DNA of 64,000 bases from Saccostrea cucullata (Eukaryota): assembly GCF_032062105.1 (NCBI RefSeq), contig NW_026921914.1, positions 1-64,000 of the forward strand, written 5' to 3'. The notes under the pieces are model-generated. The model was given only the letters and a program-made list of their open reading frames with translations, made no database searches and was not told the origin of the DNA. The translations under genes were made by a program, and so were the position numbers. Positions 30,056 through 38,276 of the stretch are shown one piece after another (within the stretch, counting starts at the first letter, position 1; each line of letters begins with the position of its first letter).

Positions 30056-31495
30056 GATATTAAAATACACCTCTCTTAACCTAGCTTGCTTGCTGGCTCA
30101 TACAATACTTTGTGATTGTTATATCATTTATTCTGAAATTATTGTTATTTCATACTTTAATTACTTAGTAATGCCTATATTTCTTAACATTTCTCGGATA
30201 TTATTTTATAAGATGTTCTTCCTTCATTTTGTATTACATATGACATTTTCGTGTAAACTGTGATTATGGAATAATAATAGGAGGATTTTTCATTGCATTA
30301 CTTTAAAATAAAATGTATGGAGAAGCTAGTGATTAACTGCTTCCATGAATAATTCATATTGTGTGCAAGCTCACCTTGGATGGCACGGATGTGATCTGCA
30401 TGTCACATCTAACATGGATGTGACTTGCATGTCACATCTTGTGGCCTATTTTGTTTTTATGTGCCATCTTTTTGCTAACTTTTTCATATGATGTTTTCAT
30501 TGTCTTCTCTTACAGATACTTTTTTCTAGTCAGTTTTGGGGGATCAGACATTATCATATTTTACGTAACTGCTAATCAAAGCTTGTGAATCTGATCCCCT
30601 TCTTGTTTGTTAAATTGTTCACATTTATACCGTCATTTTAATAAATGACATTATTCATCTCTATGAAAGTGTTTTATTTGACTTATACAAAATTAGCAAA
30701 AACAAGCTGCGGTGAGCTTGCATATAAGCATAAGAATACATAAAACAACAATTTTTAGAATAATAATTGTATTTATGTATTGAATGCGATAACATAGTTT
30801 GAGGTTTCCGGTAGGATTAATTTTGGTAAAATATAAAAAATTCTTAGATCCACGCCTTGGTTGATGGATTACGTGTGATAGTAGGTGTAAAGTCACGTGG
30901 TCAGCTCAGCGAGTCATTCCGTTGTATTGTGATAACCCGCCTGCTGACCACGCTAAAATTAGAGGCACGTCTATTTTGAAGACCCTCCTCCACTCCTGCA
31001 TTCCTACCCCTTAAAATAGGTATTAGTGTGTCATGCAAAATCATATATTTCATTAGTTCTGACTCGATTTGTTTATACTGTTTTTATGTATTTTGTTTCA
31101 CTATTATCCTTGGGCTAGGCCTATTTTGTTTTTATGTGCCATCTTTTTATTAACTTTTTCATATGATGTTTTCATTGTCTTGTCTTACAGATACTTTTTT
31201 CTAGTCAGTTTTGGGGGATCAGACATTATCATTTTTTACGTAACTGCTAATCAAAGCTTGTGAATCTGATCCCCTTCTTGTTTGTTAAATTGTTCACATT
31301 TATACCATCATTTTAATAAATGACATTATTCATCTCTATGAAAGTGTTTTATTTGACTTATACAAAATTAGCAAAAACAAGCTGCGGTGAGCTTGCATAT
31401 AAGCATAAGAATACATAAATATAATTTACTTGGGACGCTTGGTCTTACTTTAACCTATACATTTTAAATCCAAGTTGTCGCATTTCAGCTGCTCG

Positions 31496-31561: not shown

Positions 31562-34011
31562 TTAATAAAATGACAGGATGATCTTTTTACTTCGTTACAA
31601 AGCAAACATTAAAATAAAAGATCTTTTTTCTCTTTATGCCCTGTAATGTATATTATTTGGACACAGACAGTGGGGGTGTATAGTAACACTTTAGTACTCT
31701 TATCTCCCTTAAAATGATTGACAACAGAATTACATGCTTAGTAATGATAAAAAAAAATCAATACTGAAATAGTTCTTGTTCTAAAGTAAATATTTATTTA
31801 GTGCATCAAAAGTAATACCGCCGAATTTAAGGTATCAGAATTGATAACGACATACAACTAAAAAAAGAGAAAAAAAATGATAGGAAATACATGTTCATTT
31901 TTTTCAAATTAATTAGTAGCCAAAATAATATTTTAAAGTTGACTTTTTTTATCGAATGCGTTTGTATGCTTGTACATGTACACACACATATGTATTTTAA
32001 ACAAATTTGATAGAAATGGGTGTCATTTGATGTAATTAACTTATTTCTTTTATTAAAAAAAACATGATATATATTTTTTAATATTTTTAAATCAAAATAT
32101 ACCTTGGAGACCTGCTTATGTCTTGCTAGCTGCAGAACTGTAGCTCTCCGAAAAAAAATATTTTTGTTCGATTGTATGTCATAAAATAGAACTTTTACTT
32201 ACAAGAACACATTTGGTGTATTTCATTTGAATTAACCGTGTTTTCAGAATTTTTTATTTGTAAAATAATTGATTCACTGCATGCATAGTATTAAAAACTT
32301 TGAATGGAATTCTAAATGAATAATTTAATCTCATGTGCTCATGTAACGAAGAAAGACTAATTAAAATAGCATCGACCTGAATTCGTGTTACATATGTCGT
32401 ATAAAGTCTGAGCTGCATTTAATCAAAGTTTTAGTGCAGGATCTAAGCATACGTACATGCATATTCCCGAGGAAAATACACATTTTGTTTTAGATCAGAG
32501 AATCGACAGCAGAAACACGAAATAGATACAATAATTTCCTAGCGTATTTCTTGTTAATTAACGGAAAACATTCTTTTCTCAAGTGTTATTCATGTTTTAC
32601 TTTTTCTATTGAAAATGTTCATTGAAAGCTGCCACCCCCCCCCCCCAAAAAAAACACACACACAGTTTATACTACGGTAAAGTTATATAAGGGAAATGTA
32701 GTATTGTATGCCAAGGAACTGGTACTGAAATAAGTAGCTTTTCGACTTTGGGCAAGGTTTTTCTTTGCTTGTCAACTTTTCCAGGTAAGAAAAAACATAT
32801 TTCTTTGGCTGCCCCCCCCCCCCCCACTTTTAAAGACGATGATACGTGCCTGGCTAATTCGTATAGCTTTCTAGAAAGGGGGGGGGGGCAACAGACCCTT
32901 TATAAAATCGCTTATTATCTAAAAAAAAAATTGCAAACCGTTTCCTTCTTTTAAAATTTTTAATGCAGCGTGTAAGTTGATCACTATTTTGTTGGATTAT
33001 CGTAACGTGTAGTCCGCGGAAGTTGTGCTAGTGTAGAAGAGTTCCGATTTTTAGGGGAGATAACTCACTTTTGAAAATGGGGAATATGGTCAAAATTTAA
33101 AACAAGGCTTGTTGTATATGCACCTTAATGTTATCTTATGATAACATTTATTAAGGAAATTATAACAGCTGTCACATTTTTCTCAACTTTTTAGACCTCC
33201 TTTAAGAAGAAGATATGCGTATTTACTGATATTGTATTCACCTTTTAAATTTTGGGAATGCAGGTGTTTTCAAAAAATGCTCAACTACTTTAAATGCATA
33301 TGCATAGATAAAATTTGATAAAGCAATCCTCGTAATCTCTATTCGTTCAGAGGTTTCACATGCTCAAGCAATGACGACTATAAGGAAATGATTTTAAAAA
33401 CTTTAAAAATAAAAGAACAAGGACGATGGCAAAGACAATGGCACTGGTTTTGAAAACACTTTTATTTTGGATTGTATGGATTACAGCATTTTCCGGTAAG
33501 AGAAAAAAGCTTTTACTGCTTAAGAAAATAATGAATTGCATTTTGTATTGTTTTTTGAGAAGGCAGATTACCATTCAAACCTGACAAAATCCTTGTTCTG
33601 CAAAAAAAAAAAAAAAAAAAAAAAAGAAAAAAAAAGTTCACTAGAAAACCCTTAAATTGCAGTAAAGGTGAGATATATTCCATCTACTTTCACAAGAAAG
33701 CAAAATTCTTGAACATACGATAATTTGACCTTTCTTCAAAACATTGGGGGAAAAAGGTTCAATCGTCCTTTCAATAAAATTTAGAAAATTAAATTAACAG
33801 TAAAAGATTTTTTCGACAAAAGTCCCCCATAATTACTTACCAGTTTTATGAATGGCGTATCTGTAAAACAGAGAAATGCATTACAACAATTTCTCTGGAA
33901 AACGTCTGCAACATAAAGTAAAAGACATAGATGTTACTGTCTTGGTTTCATTGAAACTGCCGAATAACATGCTTTAACATTCCCTAAAATAAAATCTATT
34001 ATAGTATATAC

Positions 34012-36093
34012 TGTAACGTGCAACGCGGCCGAGCTTGGTGTTTGGTGATATGTCTTGCATCACCGAGGCGTTACACTTAGGTTCGTTAACCTGTTAACTC
34101 AGATTTTTGTTGACCAATGCGATTATAATCAAATATATACAAATACAATGGCTCTCTTCTAGATTGGACAACCACTAACTGTGGTCGACGGGTGTCTCCC
34201 GCAATGAATTACTTCGGTCCTGCCACTTCACAAGTACTGCTGCATCTTGGCACTTCCCCCACTTCTATCTGTGGTATGCCACCTCTCTCTACAACCAAGT
34301 GACTGCCTTATTCAGGTCTTACGTGCATTGTTGTACGGTGGAACACTTAGCCGTTTATCCCCTGCATCCGTCTGCCTTATTCAGGTCTTACAAACGTATG
34401 CAAGAGAAGAAACAAACTAATGTTTATCCACTCCGTCACAAGAGAGGTCCCCTGAGTTCCCGTAACACAACATGTATTACCTCAGTGCAGCCCCGTACAT
34501 AGGCAGTTTCATACTACTTGTATGACCTGAGAATTAATATTTTTAAGCGTTTAAGAATTCATATAAAAACTTAAGTCTAACTTTAAAACGAAACTAAATC
34601 ACGAAACCAAATTCCGTTTCATTACCCTCCCCTTAAGATTATATGTGTCCAGCATATGATTAACTATTTACAATTTTTTTTACATCTATATACAATTCTT
34701 TGCATTGCCTGACAATTTGTGACATCTCCCTAGGCATCGATGAATGTATCTTTGGTCAGAGTTTCTCGCACATCACCAGGTGCTGATGCGTAGGCCAAAT
34801 TGTTAATCGTCTAATAACCTGACCTAACTCTGGTATAGACTCAGATGCGCTTTGCCATCTTTCTTTAGCTTAACACGATACAGATCTGTTTGGTTAAGAG
34901 GGGAGAACCTCTCCTCAAGGGATCTGACCAGTGTCTTATAATGCTGACCAGTATCACTTGGTAAGTCACCTAACACTGACTGTGCTTTTCCACGCAGTGA
35001 TACAGCCAGGTAAAGACCCTTCTTATCTTCTGTCCAGCCGTTTACAACAGCACAAGCCTCAAAATGTGATTTGTAGTCAAGCCAGGAACTGGTTCCGTCA
35101 TACGTGGCTGGCTTGATTATATGGCCTGTCTTGGCATTGTCTGTCCCCATTGACTGCCCCCATGGTTTTGGCGTGTCAAATAGATGGCCCGTCACAATGT
35201 CGTCAACCCCAGCATGTGGTGTAAAGCTTGGTTTGCCTTCTTCTGGAAATCTAACTTTAGGCCGTGCGCCGTACTCGTCAAATGACACATCTCCTGACAT
35301 ACCGGCCGGTTGATAATCAGTACTGTGTGTCGCATATCCAGACTCTTGGCTTGTCGCATTTGTCTGACCATCGTTGCTGGTTGGCGTTCTCATCCTTTCC
35401 AAGATCTTCTCCCGCCGCTCGATAGTTTCTGACACTTTCTTATGTGAATCCATGGTCAACAAAATCCCACCGTTGCCACCAAATAATGTAACGTGCAACG
35501 CGGCCGAGCTTGGTGTTTGGTGATATGTCTTGCATCACCGAGGCGTTACACTTAGGTTCGTTAACCTGTTAACTCAGATTTTTGTTGACCAATGCGATTA
35601 TAATCAAATATATACAAATACAATGGCTTTCTTCTTGATTGGACAACCACTAACTGTGGTCGACAGGGTGTCTCCCGCAATGAATTACTTCGGTCCTGCC
35701 ACTTCACAAGTACTGCTGCATCTTGGCACTTCCCCCACTTCTATCTGTGGTATGCCACCTCTCTCTACAACCAAGTGACTGCCTTATTCAGGTCTTACGT
35801 GCATTGTTGTACTGTGGAACACTTAGCCGTTTATCCCCTGCATCCGTCTGCCTTATTCAGGTCTTACAAACGTATGCAAGAGAAGAAACAAACTAATGTT
35901 TATCCACTCCGTCACCAGAGAGGTCCCCTGAGTTCCCGTAACACAACATGTATTACCTCAGTGCAGCCCCGTACACAGTTTCATACTACTTGTATGACCT
36001 GAGAATTAATATTTTTTAGCGTTTAAGAATTTATATAAAAACGTAGGTCTAACTTTAAAACGAAACTAAATCACGAAACCAAATTCCGTTTCA
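34012..36093 (-). mobile_element. Internally deleted (non-autonomous) Ty3/Gypsy LTR retrotransposon
   Basis: LTRs 34012-34621 and 35487-36093 (TG..CA, ~98% identical); 4-bp TSD ATAC; PBS 35464-35481 (TGGTGGCAACGGTGGGAT on -, tRNA-Leu type); PPT AAGGGGAGGGTAA; only a truncated gag inside. Confidence 0.93.
34730..35453 (-). pseudogene. gag: Truncated, frameshifted Gypsy gag
   Basis: KPATYDGTSSWLDYKSHFEACAVVNGW..LRGKAQSVLG aligns by eye to the gag at 38371; after a frameshift at ~34865 homology continues to ..VRETLTKDTFIDAL, then breaks off. Confidence 0.85.
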
Positions 36094-37549
36094 ATACACT
36101 GTATAACAATAGTTTATAATTACTGTAAACGTGTTAAAATATACTAGAATCTTTATTGATACTTTAATTTTTATTATTTTAAGACATTTTATTCAGTGAT
36201 ACAAAGCTTGTCTAAAAAAAAAAAAACAGTGTACAAAAAAATTTAAATAATTTGTAAATATACAGGTGATAATATTTCCATTTAATAATAAAAAGATAAT
36301 GTGCATTTAAATAAAAGTGAGGTTTATTGAAAATAATCGTTGAAATAGAATTTTAATCCAAATTGAATATTTTCTTAGTCTTCCTTGGTCGAATTGTACC
36401 CCGATCCCATTTAATTGTTTAACACCAAAAGTAAAAGATAGAAATTACGTACGTTGTGTATTATAAATCTTACTGGCCATATATCATAAAAATTCTCTGT
36501 TGATTTTGTTTAAAGATCTAGAGTTTTGACACTAGATTTTTTAAATGTGTCTATACATTCTATTCCTTGGTAAACGTTCTACATTTCATAATCTATAGAA
36601 TCCCAATGTTTGGTCTAGGGCTGTGCAATATTACCGGTATATCGGTATATTGCGGTATTATCCACCACGATAATATATCACGATATGAAGGCCAGATACC
36701 GGTATTTCACGATATTTATAAGAATATATAAAAAAAACTCCTTCATTGTAGAAACTGCTGGAATAATACTTGTAACTTCCCCAGGCCTTTGAAATCTAGT
36801 TAAATGAATACTTCGTCAGCTTTCGAAGAGAGATAGAGAGAAGAGAGAGAGAGAGAGGAATCTTATCATTCACTGTTCACAATTTTAAATACCTTACTTA
36901 AAAAATAATAATTAATAAAGACTTTTGAATAAAATTATTTAGAAAGAAAATATATTAAACATTTCTACAGGGTGTATGCCATGTTTACCATGGTTCTCAA
37001 AATCTCGCATGGAATCTACACGGTCGATGTCACGATGATGAATGTTAAGTTCAAGATACATATTACAAGTAAATGGCCATCCATGTTTTCACTTGATACA
37101 GTGATGCTTTTATTATTTTTTAATAAGTTTCATGCCATTTTTAACAACTTCGTGCTATACTAGGAGCATGTGTATTAAAACAGTAGAAATAGGCCAGTGC
37201 AGTTCCTGATCGTTGGTCATAATGTGAAATTAGGTCGGGTTAGACTAAAACACAAAAAACGCCCGAAAATGTGTCACAATTTCTTTTGGCTTTAATTTCA
37301 TTCTGTGATCACATATAAAATTTTCATATACATGTAGTATGTATTGTTTTAATCATTAAGTTATATTCTGTGCTATTTCAATCACCCACCCCCCCCCCCC
37401 AAAAAAAAAAAACTTAAAAATGTAACAAGATTATATACTCTGTATTAACTTTTTTCAATTTCAAAATGCTTCAAGAGAGTTCACTTAGTTTTACATGTAT
37501 TATTTTACCTGGTATTTGATTAAAAGTAAAGTGTTATTATGTATGCAAT

Positions 37550-38252
37550 TGTGACAATTCCGGAATTTTAAGGTACGACCATGCAGAGTTCTCAATTAGT
37601 CATCGTTAACATCACGTGACTTTGATAGGGTATATATATCGAGACTCTGCAGTCGTCTGTGTCATTGTTGATGCGCCGGCCAAAGAGAGAAGACGAGTGT
37701 AAGTGTCATATGCATAAAGCATTGTTATTAATTCCTCGCCTGTTAATGCAGTTTAGAGAGTGAATTTGGAAGGCCATTTGAGGTTTGCCAAACCTGCTAT
37801 AAGGCCTGCCACAAACTTGGTTAACCTCAAGCAAAGAGGCTAGCCATAAAGTTCGTCTGCATTCGCTGACCAGTCCGTCCAGGCCGCTATACTCATTGTC
37901 CGTCCTGAATAAGGCATCCTACAGTGAGTGTAGTGGTTGAAGGGCTATCACATATACTGTCCGTCCTGAATAAGGCATCCTACAGTATATGCGGTAGTCC
38001 AAGGGCGACTGGCCTTGCATTTTAGTATTATTATTAATAGGTCTACCAGATAATTTATTGTTGCTTGCCTCTGATTGATTGTATTGATTCACCATTTGAT
38101 TATTGTTAACCTAGATAAGGTTAGGACGTATTTGTATATTTCGGCAGTCCTTTTTAATCATACCAATCAATTTTAAATCAGTTTATGTTTTACACCCCAA
38201 ACCCTGGAAATAACCAGGTACGATCCCATTGATTAATTGTAAATACGTTACA
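37550..38252 (+). repeat. 5' LTR
   Basis: TGTGAC...GTTACA; TATA box 37631-37638, Inr-like TCATT ~37662, GTAAGT donor 37699. Confidence 0.95.
37870..38012 (+). promoter_or_regulatory. Structured RNA element in LTR: three-way junction with two hairpins capped by an identical 21-nt apex (CCGUCCUGAAUAAGGCAUCCU)
   Basis: 17-bp stem 37883-37899/37921-37937 and 19-bp stem 37942-37960/37982-38000 with G-U pairs on the + strand; closing stem 37870-37880/38003-38012. Confidence 0.75.
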
Positions 38253-38258
38253 AAAATT

Positions 38259-38276
38259 TGGTGGCAGCGTCGGGAT
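38259..38276 (+). promoter_or_regulatory. Primer-binding site (tRNA-Leu type)
   Basis: TGGTGGCAGCGTCGGGAT, close to the complement of the 3' end of metazoan tRNA-Leu(AAG/TAG) as I recall it. Confidence 0.8.

What the first reader, a model, noticed from the sequence alone, without database searches (positions are those of the whole stretch)
37870..38012. Twin RNA hairpins with identical apex CCUGAAUAAGG in the LTR, resembling lambda boxB
Seen: two long stems of different sequence (17 bp with four G-U pairs; 19 bp with one mismatch) carry the same 21-nt apex containing CCU-GAAUA-AGG and are closed by a third stem. G-U pairs work only on the + (sense) strand, which favours RNA over DNA structure. 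One of the LTR-LTR differences (G to A at 44608) converts U-G to U-A. Established: lambda boxB is GCCCU-GAARA-AGGGC, a GNRA-like pentaloop bound by arginine-rich peptides, and MLV Psi uses twin hairpins with identical loops. Inference: a protein-binding, packaging or dimerisation signal. Alternative: AAUAAG loops acting as sequestered variant poly(A) signals.
Basis: partly seen in the sequence, partly recalled or inferred. Interest (0 to 1): 0.85.

Follow-up and report, generated by a model that had tools for sequence, protein, structure and literature searches.

The report
Poly(A)-signal hairpins in oyster retrotransposon LTR
Two real, conserved RNA hairpins in the long terminal repeat of an intact-looking oyster Ty3/gypsy retrotransposon most likely display a weak polyadenylation signal (AAUAAG) at their tips, much as HIV-1 does with its poly(A) hairpin, rather than forming a phage-boxB-like protein site.

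Summary
Window 37870-38012 folds on the + strand into two hairpins of 18-19 bp with an identical apex (-69.4 kcal/mol, z = -8.3; minus strand z = -2.4). It lies in the 702-bp LTR of a 7.4-kb Ty3/gypsy retrotransposon in a Saccostrea oyster genome.

The hairpin block is the best conserved non-coding part of the element: 97% and 90% identity to copies in S. echinata and Ostrea edulis, against 67-81% for the rest of the LTR. The apex core CUGAAUAAG recurs on unrelated stems in four further families, including two from the pearl oyster.

The headline reading (boxB or Psi-like protein or dimerisation site) is not supported.
- The loop hexamer AAUAAG is followed by CA at +9/10 and then by the most GU-rich stretch of the LTR, the layout of a metazoan poly(A) site.
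- Two related families that lack the motif carry AAUAAA or AUUAAA in the same loop register.
- A conserved TATA box and a splice-donor-like site lie upstream of the hairpins.

No transcript ends were available, so use as a poly(A) site is inferred, with confidence about 0.5. I rate it a new variant of a known kind, of moderate interest.

The parts
37550..38251 (+). 5' LTR (702 bp) of a Ty3/gypsy-type LTR retrotransposon (element A)
   Evidence: It matches 44228-44929 with 3 differences. It starts TGT and ends GTTAC(A). The 5-bp flanking duplication GCAAT lies at 37545-37549 and 44930-44934.
37631..37639 (+). TATA box, conserved across families; implies a transcription start near 37660-37670 (inferred)
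   Evidence: GG(G)TATA(T/A)A(T/A)A-type box aligned in element A (3 species), C, L085, L086, L087 and L088, with a near-match in L084.
37699..37704 (+). 5' splice-site-like GTAAGT in the leader (inferred donor for the ORF2 mRNA or a short leader intron)
   Evidence: A G|GTAAG-like site lies 58-80 nt after the TATA box in 8 of 9 family LTRs.
37870..38012 (+). The finding: twin hairpins closed by a third stem
   Evidence: RNAfold -69.4 kcal/mol, z = -8.33. Identity to S. echinata is 97% and to O. edulis 90%, against 67-81% for the rest of the LTR.
37882..37938 (+). Hairpin 1. Apex CCU-GAAUA-AGG with hexamer AAUAAG at 37908-37913, CA at 37922-37923, GU-rich 3' arm at 37924-37938
   Evidence: -28.0 kcal/mol. 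CA lies at +9/10 after the hexamer, followed by a 15-mer with 87% G+U that ranks in the top 0.3% of LTR windows.
37942..38000 (+). Hairpin 2. Same apex, hexamer AAUAAG at 37969-37974, CA at 37983-37984
   Evidence: -26.7 kcal/mol. The downstream GU signal is weaker, 67%.
38013..38075 (+). U- and GU-rich tract after the hairpins, with the conserved block (C/G)(T/G)ACCA(G/A); possible downstream element or second cleavage zone (inferred)
   Evidence: LTR alignment of element A (3 species) and family C.
38203..38218 (+). Small U5 hairpin CCTGG-AAATAA-CCAGG near the LTR end
   Evidence: Stem kept in 4 sequences, with U-A changed to U-G in family C; the loop is variable.
38259..38276 (+). Primer binding site-like TGGTGGCAGCGTCGGGAT
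   Evidence: Read directly. Similar sites follow the LTR in L003, L084, L085, L087 and L088.
38371..43302 (+). ORF1, gag-pol polyprotein, uninterrupted (open from 38320; first ATG at 38371)
   Evidence: Pfam finds gag, aspartyl protease, RT, RNase H and integrase. One CCHC knuckle and no internal stop.
43374..44060 (+). ORF2, a 228-aa accessory protein with two C2H2-type zinc fingers, an acidic middle and a basic C-terminus
   Evidence: Homologues occur in oyster and pearl-oyster elements. The PDB profile hits finger pairs of ZNF64, ZBTB10 and CTCF. A pyrimidine tract plus TAG directly precedes the ATG in 5 of 5 relatives.
44193..44209 (+). Conserved 7-bp hairpin with a GGN triloop, 4 nt upstream of the polypurine tract
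   Evidence: Present in 9 families, with compensatory changes in L084, L085 and L088.
44214..44227 (+). Polypurine tract GGAGGCATGGGTAG
   Evidence: Abuts the 3' LTR and is conserved in all families.
44228..44929 (+). 3' LTR, with the second copy of the twin hairpins at 44548-44690
34008..36100 (-). Element B: a second, internally deleted relative (two LTRs of about 620 bp around a gag fragment). Each LTR carries the apex CCTGAATAAGGCA twice
   Evidence: B hairpin 1 folds well (z = -4.8); hairpin 2 does not (z = 0.0).

Best explanation
The twin hairpins are poly(A)-site hairpins of the retrotransposon's R/U5 region.

Proposed layout and mechanism:
- Transcription starts about 30 nt after the conserved TATA box, near 37665.
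- Each hairpin tip shows the first four bases of a weak poly(A) hexamer, AAUAAG, in a 5-nt loop. The last two bases are paired in a 3-bp apical stem.
- In hairpin 1 a CA dinucleotide follows 9-10 nt later, then a GU-rich stretch that forms the 3' arm of the stem. So the hexamer, the cleavage site and the downstream element of one poly(A) site are all folded into one hairpin.
- In the 3' LTR this site, with hairpin 2 as a second weaker copy, would end the genomic RNA.
- In the 5' LTR the same site would be passed over because it is weak, close to the promoter and occluded once the stem has formed.

Shown here: the structure, its conservation, the three-part sequence layout, and the shared loop register in relatives.
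Inferred: the transcription start, actual cleavage at these sites, and the different behaviour of the 5' and 3' copies.
For: 1. The structure is real and strand-specific.
2. The apex core CUGAAUAAG is invariant on unrelated stems in element A (3 oyster species), B, C and Pinctada L084 and L088. In L088 the outer apical pair changes from C-G to A-U, a compensatory change.
3. After the hexamer of hairpin 1, CA lies at +9/10 and then comes the GU-richest 15-mer of the LTR: 87% G+U, top 0.3-1.6% of windows in the three A-type LTRs. Family C hairpin 1 gives 80% (top 2%). Pinctada L084 gives CA at +11 and 87% (top 0.5%).
4. The two sampled relatives that lack the motif but carry canonical hexamers are L085 and L086. 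Three of their four LTR hexamers have the first 4 nt in the loop and the last 2 nt paired, on stems of 6-8 bp. Only 2.5% of 803 background hexamers do this.
5. On the pol tree the AAUAAA-hairpin family L085 is sister to the AAUAAG-variant family L088. The hexamers lie at similar distances from the TATA box, 101-134 nt in L088, L084 and L085.
6. No conserved AAUAAA or AUUAAA occurs in the motif-bearing LTRs.
7. A conserved TATA box and a donor-like site lie upstream of the hairpins, which places them in transcribed sequence.
8. Literature: AAUAAG is a genuine minor poly(A) signal in human and mouse, peaking 20-22 nt upstream of cleavage (PMC4971764). The HIV-1 poly(A) hairpin holds AAUAAA and represses use of the 5' copy (PMC2645353).
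Against: - No transcript 5' or 3' ends could be obtained, so R, U5 and the cleavage site are all inferred.
- The stems are very stable (-28 and -27 kcal/mol). The small hexamer hairpins of L085 and L086 are only -4 to -6 kcal/mol. From my own knowledge, stabilising the lentiviral poly(A) hairpin blocks polyadenylation. Such strong stems could silence the site at both ends.
- The same hairpin is present in both LTRs, and no 3'-specific enhancer was identified.
- Conservation of 9-13 nt (CCUGAAUAAGGC) goes beyond what a hexamer plus a 3-bp stem needs, which suggests a specific binding partner.
- Hairpin 2, B hairpin 1 and L088 lack a strong GU-rich follow-up.
- The absence of canonical hexamers is only marginal statistically: 0.4-0.8 are expected per LTR, giving a combined P of about 0.06.
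- AAUAAG activity in bivalves is unknown.
- Only 9 families could be sampled.
Confidence: 0.5

Rival explanations
1. Protein-binding RNA element with another job. The two identical tips would bind two copies of a protein: Gag nucleocapsid for packaging, a host export or stability factor, or the element's own zinc-finger ORF2 protein. This could coexist with a poly(A) role, as reported for the HIV-1 5' poly(A) signal (title of PMC5961354).
For: - A 9-13-nt apex is invariant on variable stems in five families.
- The hairpin is duplicated in all three oyster (Ostreidae) lineages sampled: A, B and C.
- The loop GAAUA formally fits a G-N-R-N-A pentaloop pattern.
- Gag has a CCHC knuckle.
- ORF2 is a conserved nucleic-acid-binding-type protein.
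Against: - The position is inside the LTR and not between the primer binding site and gag.
- Pinctada families have only one hairpin.
- ORF2 is also present in L085, which lacks the motif, so the two do not co-vary.
- No partner was identified and no Rfam family matches.
- This reading does not explain the CA plus GU-rich layout, nor the canonical hexamers in the same register in relatives.
Confidence: 0.25
2. DNA-level element. The repeated 13-mer would be a double-stranded binding site, acting as an enhancer or repressor site, for a host factor or for the two-finger ORF2 protein. The flanking inverted repeats would be incidental.
For: - The ORF2 fingers resemble DNA-binding finger pairs of ZNF64, ZBTB10 and CTCF.
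- Repeated short motifs in LTRs are typical enhancers (general knowledge).
Against: - Stems of 17-24 bp are kept with different sequences and compensatory changes.
- There is strong strand asymmetry of folding because of the G-U pairs.
- The position is downstream of the conserved TATA box.
Confidence: 0.07
3. Small-RNA precursor. The two-hairpin dumbbell would be processed into microRNA-like RNAs, as reported for LTR-encoded precursors of some retroviruses (from my own knowledge).
For: - The dumbbell shape, with hairpins of about 60 nt.
- A TTTT run right after the closing stem in A-type LTRs.
- A weak Rfam mir-144 hit on hairpin 2.
Against: - The Rfam hit scores 19 bits against a threshold of 60.
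- The conservation pattern is the reverse of a microRNA: the loop is fixed and the arms are free to change between families.
- The closing stem and the T-run are not conserved in C or B.
Confidence: 0.05
4. No function of its own. A recent 61-bp tandem duplication of a palindromic LTR segment would be carried along by an active element.
For: The 28-nt cores of hairpins 1 and 2 are identical, and the arms look like diverged duplicates.
Against: - The block is the most conserved non-coding part across genera.
- The apex is shared by families with only 52-67% pol identity.
- Pairing is kept despite sequence turnover.
Confidence: 0.03

Closest known systems
Lentiviral (HIV-1) poly(A) hairpin in the R region
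   Same: A hairpin in the repeat region of a reverse-transcribing element carries the poly(A) hexamer in its upper part. It is present in both LTRs and is thought to mask the signal (PMC2645353). Here the hexamer, CA and the GU-rich element are folded in the same way, by sequence.
   Different: - No homology was tested, because fetching animal-virus comparators is barred.
- The hexamer is the weak variant AAUAAG.
- The hairpin is duplicated.
- The stems are much more stable.
- The host is a bivalve Ty3/gypsy retrotransposon.
- No 3'-specific enhancer or downstream splice donor that could tell the two copies apart was identified.
Phage lambda boxB / N-peptide hairpin
   Same: A 5-nt purine-rich loop beginning with G and ending with A, on a short stem closed by pyrimidine-purine pairs.
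   Different: - The apical stem has only 3 bp and sits on a long stem with an internal loop.
- The context is a eukaryotic retrotransposon, not a phage operon.
- There is no boxA-like partner site.
- No arginine-rich peptide partner was found.
- The loop overlaps a poly(A) hexamer.
The resemblance is to the loop pattern only.
Gammaretroviral packaging-signal twin hairpins
   Same: Two adjacent hairpins with identical loops.
   Different: - Here they lie inside the LTR, upstream of the primer binding site.
- The loop is not self-complementary, so loop-loop pairing between two RNAs is not possible in the simple way.
- No complementary sequence is conserved elsewhere in the element.
Deltaretroviral Rex-responsive structure at the 3' LTR (from my own knowledge)
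   Same: A large RNA structure in the LTR linked to poly(A) site use, in an element that also encodes a spliced accessory protein.
   Different: That structure brings a distant hexamer close to the cleavage site. Here the hexamer sits at the tip and the cleavage site is at canonical linear distance. No link between ORF2 and the hairpins is shown.

Membership tests
Ty3/gypsy (Metaviridae-type) LTR retrotransposon (the host element) | Two LTRs, a target-site duplication, a primer binding site, a polypurine tract, and the domain order gag-protease-RT-RNase H-integrase | tested here: met
   702-bp LTRs with 3 differences, the duplication GCAAT, and Pfam domains in the Ty3/gypsy order.
Retroviral-type poly(A) hairpin | The hairpin holds the poly(A) hexamer | tested here: met
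   AAUAAG sits at the tip of both hairpins, with AAUA unpaired and AG paired. The register is the same for AAUAAA and AUUAAA in L085 and L086.
Retroviral-type poly(A) hairpin | Cleavage dinucleotide and GU-rich downstream element at canonical spacing | tested here: met
   Met at the sequence level only. CA lies at +9 to +11, and the GU-richest LTR window follows in A hairpin 1, C hairpin 1 and L084. It is weak for hairpin 2, B and L088.
Retroviral-type poly(A) hairpin | Lies in R, that is downstream of the transcription start and present at both RNA ends up to the cleavage site | tested here: inconclusive
   A conserved TATA box and a donor-like site lie upstream, but no transcript ends were available.
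Retroviral-type poly(A) hairpin | Actually used for cleavage and polyadenylation at the 3' LTR and bypassed at the 5' LTR | not testable with these tools
   This needs 3'-end and 5'-end RNA data from the oyster.
Lambda-type boxB | GNRA-like pentaloop on a short G-C stem | tested here: inconclusive
   The loop GAAUA fits the letter pattern, but the stem has only 3 bp. The three-dimensional loop fold cannot be tested here.
Lambda-type boxB | A cognate arginine-rich peptide and a nut-site context (a phage antitermination operon) | tested here: not met
   The element is a eukaryotic retrotransposon. Its only extra protein is a C2H2 zinc-finger protein.
Gammaretroviral Psi twin hairpins | Located in the leader between the primer binding site and gag | tested here: not met
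   The hairpins end at 38012 and the primer binding site starts at 38259. They are inside the LTR.
Gammaretroviral Psi twin hairpins | Loops able to pair with each other between two genomes | tested here: not met
   The loop and apex are not palindromic (read directly). No conserved complement occurs in five elements.
Any Rfam family | Reaches the family's gathering score | tested here: not met
   There is no hit on the hairpins at gathering threshold. The best sub-threshold hit is mir-144, 19 bits against 60.
microRNA precursor / LTR dumbbell precursor | Arms (mature sequences) conserved and loop free to vary | tested here: not met
   The pattern is the opposite: the apex is invariant and 14 of 19 stem pairs vary on one or both sides.

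The most novel reading that the evidence does not exclude
The invariant tip CUGAAUAAG is a switch read by a specific protein, possibly the element's own spliced two-zinc-finger ORF2 product. That protein would decide whether the hairpin-embedded poly(A) site is used or read through. This would give a bivalve Ty3/gypsy retrotransposon a regulatory circuit of the kind known only from complex retroviruses: an accessory protein plus an LTR response element.
Probability: 0.1. Interest if true: 0.75.

Novelty: new variant of a known kind. Interest (0 to 1): 0.45.

Why it matters
If the reading is right, masking the poly(A) signal in an R-region hairpin is not special to lentiviruses. It would be an old, recurring answer to a problem every LTR element has: the same signal sits at both ends of its RNA.

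The bivalve clade would offer a natural series for studying how structure tunes poly(A) site strength. The series runs from small hairpins with canonical hexamers, through single long hairpins, to twin long hairpins with a weak hexamer.

There is also a practical point for genome annotation. The element, with its spliced zinc-finger ORF2, is annotated in oyster genomes as an ordinary host gene, for example 'RE1-silencing transcription factor-like' in O. edulis.

Tried and rejected
- Rfam at gathering and at permissive thresholds: nothing relevant.
- Pattern scan of metagenome contigs for the twin 11-mer. It returned 71 loci, all unrelated: CRISPR arrays whose repeat happens to hold the 11-mer, bacterial repeats, and soil hairpins with the same loop on G/C stems. 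This was a dead end, and a warning that the 11-mer alone is not diagnostic.
- Covariance model R1 built from 8 hairpins. It recovers only its own members plus the bare 12-nt apex in B and L084, and finds no hidden hairpins in L085-L088.
- Search for transcript-derived contigs that would give RNA ends. The Logan contigs of relatives are broken at repeat borders or are circularly permuted DNA assemblies. Two look-ups returned no DNA.
- Loop-loop or long-range RNA pairing of the apex: no conserved complement.
- Co-occurrence of ORF2 and the motif: rejected, because L085 has ORF2 but no motif.
- Depletion of canonical hexamers as a statistical argument: only marginal.
- L001 is not an independent copy. 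It is a 99.5% identical duplicate of the whole 20.7-kb region including the flanks, probably the other haplotype.
- Structure prediction of ORF2 was not run, because it is peripheral to the finding.

Full report
**1. What is there**

The window is contig JAVVLV010004051.1:1-64000 of assembly GCA_032062105.1. The ORF2 protein is 99% identical to a Saccostrea cucullata protein. The host is therefore a Saccostrea oyster, S. cucullata or a very close relative.

The finding lies in the 5' LTR (37550-38251) of a 7.4-kb Ty3/gypsy-type LTR retrotransposon on the + strand.
- The 3' LTR is 44228-44929. Each LTR is 702 bp and they differ at 3 positions.
- The flanking duplication is GCAAT.
- A primer binding site-like sequence lies at 38259-38276 and a polypurine tract at 44214-44227.
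- ORF1 (38371-43302) is an uninterrupted gag-protease-RT-RNase H-integrase polyprotein with one CCHC knuckle.
- ORF2 (43374-44060, 228 aa) is open. No gene of this copy is broken.

A second relative, element B, lies on the minus strand at about 34008-36100. It keeps two LTRs around a gag fragment only. One large internal deletion has removed pol and ORF2.

**2. The observation**

- RNAfold of 37870-38012 on the + strand gives two hairpins closed by a third stem: -69.4 kcal/mol, z = -8.33, no shuffle as good. The minus strand gives -45.2 kcal/mol, z = -2.36.
- Hairpin 1 (37882-37938) has 18 bp with 5 G-U pairs. Hairpin 2 (37942-38000) has 19 positions with one A.C mismatch.
- The two share 28 identical nucleotides around the apex CCU-GAAUA-AGG.
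- In the ensemble, the loop bases GAAUA are unpaired and the apical 3-bp stem is formed.
A second LTR-LTR difference (37953 versus 44631) breaks a pair in hairpin 2. Both are neutral post-insertion changes in one copy.

**3. Conservation**

ORF2 look-ups gave full copies in S. echinata (L006) and Ostrea edulis (L007).
- The 143-nt block is 97% and 90% identical to these copies.
- The rest of the LTR is 67-81% identical, ORF1 85-90% and ORF2 76-82%.
- The block matches the best conserved pol segments.
- The third, closing stem is weakened in O. edulis and is not used in its best fold.

The apex also occurs in more distant families.
- Family C (L003, pol 62-67% identical) has two hairpins 90 nt apart on quite different stems.
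- Element B has two.
- Pinctada L084 (pol about 52-55%) has one.
- Pinctada L088 has a variant in which the outer apical pair is A-U in place of C-G, a change on both sides.
- Families L085, L086 and L087 lack the motif.

On an alignment of eight hairpins, 88.5% of cells are paired against 31-46% when the partners are slid. Nine of 19 stem pairs show changes on both sides, and the apical pairs never vary. These are few independent lineages, so the covariation is suggestive and not statistically rigorous. Individual hairpins have z-scores of -3.9 to -6.4 in A and C and -4.8 in B hairpin 1. Pinctada gives weak values, and B hairpin 2 gives none.

**4. What it most likely is**

Several lines converge on a poly(A) site folded into a hairpin.

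(a) Transcribed position. A TATA box is conserved across the families (window 37631-37639). A splice-donor-like G|GTAAG follows 58-80 nt later in 8 of 9 LTRs. The ATG of ORF2 is directly preceded by a pyrimidine tract and TAG in 5 of 5 relatives. The region between the TATA box and the hairpins therefore looks transcribed, with a short leader exon. That places the hairpins about 205-350 nt into the RNA.

(b) The hexamer. The loop holds AAUAAG. This is a documented minor poly(A) signal in mammals (PMC4971764).

(c) Three-part layout.
- In hairpin 1, CA follows at +9/10. Then comes the 3' arm GUGAGUGUAGUGGUU, which is 87% G+U and ranks in the top 0.3% of LTR windows.
- Family C hairpin 1 has the same layout (80%, top 2%).
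- The single Pinctada L084 hairpin also has it (CA at +11; 87%, top 0.5%).
- This also explains why hairpin 1 has so many G-U pairs.

(d) Same register in relatives. In L085 and L086, canonical AAUAAA or AUUAAA hexamers sit in the same register on small hairpins: the first four bases end the loop and the last two open the 3' strand. Three of four hexamers do this on stems of 6-8 bp. The background is 2.5% of 803 hexamers.

(e) Phylogeny. On a pol tree the motif-bearing families L084, A and C group together. The AAUAAA-hairpin family L085 is sister to the AAUAAG-variant family L088. This fits positional homology of the hexamers.

(f) No other conserved hexamer. No conserved canonical hexamer exists in the motif-bearing LTRs. 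Only 0.4-0.8 would be expected per LTR, so this point is weak.

The closest functional analogue is the HIV-1 poly(A) hairpin (PMC2645353).

**5. What remains open**

- I could not obtain any transcript ends.
- The stems are far more stable than the small hairpins of relatives.
- The same structure is present in both LTRs.
- The invariant 9-13-nt tip is more than a hexamer needs.

A specific protein partner therefore remains quite possible, and it is compatible with a poly(A) role. ORF2 is not strictly tied to the motif, because L085 has ORF2 without it. Its two fingers resemble DNA-binding finger pairs.

**6. Comparison with known systems**

- No Rfam family matches.
- The boxB likeness is limited to the loop's letter pattern.
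- The Psi likeness is limited to 'two hairpins, same loop'.
- For both comparisons, defining features were tested and not met (see Membership tests).
- A survey of mollusc LTR retrotransposons (PMC6238403) mentions no hairpins, extra ORFs or poly(A) signals, judged by term search.
Noticed in passing
window 43374-44060; L003 5092-5745; L084 8940-9770; L085 5427-6194: A conserved accessory ORF2 follows pol. It has two C2H2-type zinc fingers, an acidic serine-rich middle and a basic C-terminus, and it is annotated in oyster genomes as a host gene. A pyrimidine tract plus TAG directly before its ATG suggests expression from a spliced mRNA.
   Followed up: partly
window 44193-44209 (and the same place in 8 other families): A 7-bp hairpin with a GGN triloop lies 4 nt upstream of the polypurine tract. 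Compensatory base changes occur in L084, L085 and L088. This is a cleaner case of covariation than the main finding. Its function is unknown; it may help define the plus-strand primer.
   Followed up: partly
window 37699-37704 and about 37745-37752: A GTAAGT lies 68 nt after the TATA box, and a pyrimidine tract plus CAG lies about 50 nt further on. Both are conserved in three oyster species while the sequence between them varies. This may be a leader splice donor and a very short leader intron.
   Followed up: partly
window 44146-44151 (within 44143-44154): A canonical ATTAAA or AATAAA lies 65-80 nt upstream of the 3' LTR, at an aligned position in most families. It may be a separate poly(A) signal for the ORF2 mRNA. 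It is not statistically secure in this AT-rich stretch.
   Followed up: partly
window 34008-36100, minus strand: Element B is an internally deleted relative: two LTRs of about 620 bp, 96-98% alike, around a gag fragment. It lies 1.4 kb upstream of element A in opposite orientation and carries the same apex twice per LTR.
   Followed up: partly
L001 (contig JAVVLV010016307.1) versus window 33374-54060: A second contig of the same assembly is 99.5% identical over 20.7 kb, including both elements and their flanks. It is probably the other haplotype and not a second insertion.
   Followed up: yes
window 38203-38218: A small U5 hairpin CCTGG-AAATAA-CCAGG lies near the LTR end. Its stem is kept in four sequences (one U-A to U-G change) and its loop varies. 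The next bases resemble a tRNA T-arm and could pair with the distal primer binding site.
   Followed up: no
window 47462-47534: A tRNA-Thr(CGT) call by ARAGORN scores only 31 bits in Rfam against a threshold of 29. It may be a tRNA-derived repeat.
   Followed up: no
window 30443-31417 and 48009-48711: Other direct repeats occur: 300-nt copies 675 bp apart (98% alike), and units of about 428 bp with 72-78% identity. They were not examined.
   Followed up: no
L013, L022-L024, L042, L048 and others; L020, L028, L032, L054: Unrelated metagenome sequences share the 11-mer. One group is a CRISPR repeat that contains CCTGAATAAGG. Another is a set of soil contigs with paired hairpins 75 nt apart that show the same GAAUA loop on G/C stems.
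   Followed up: no
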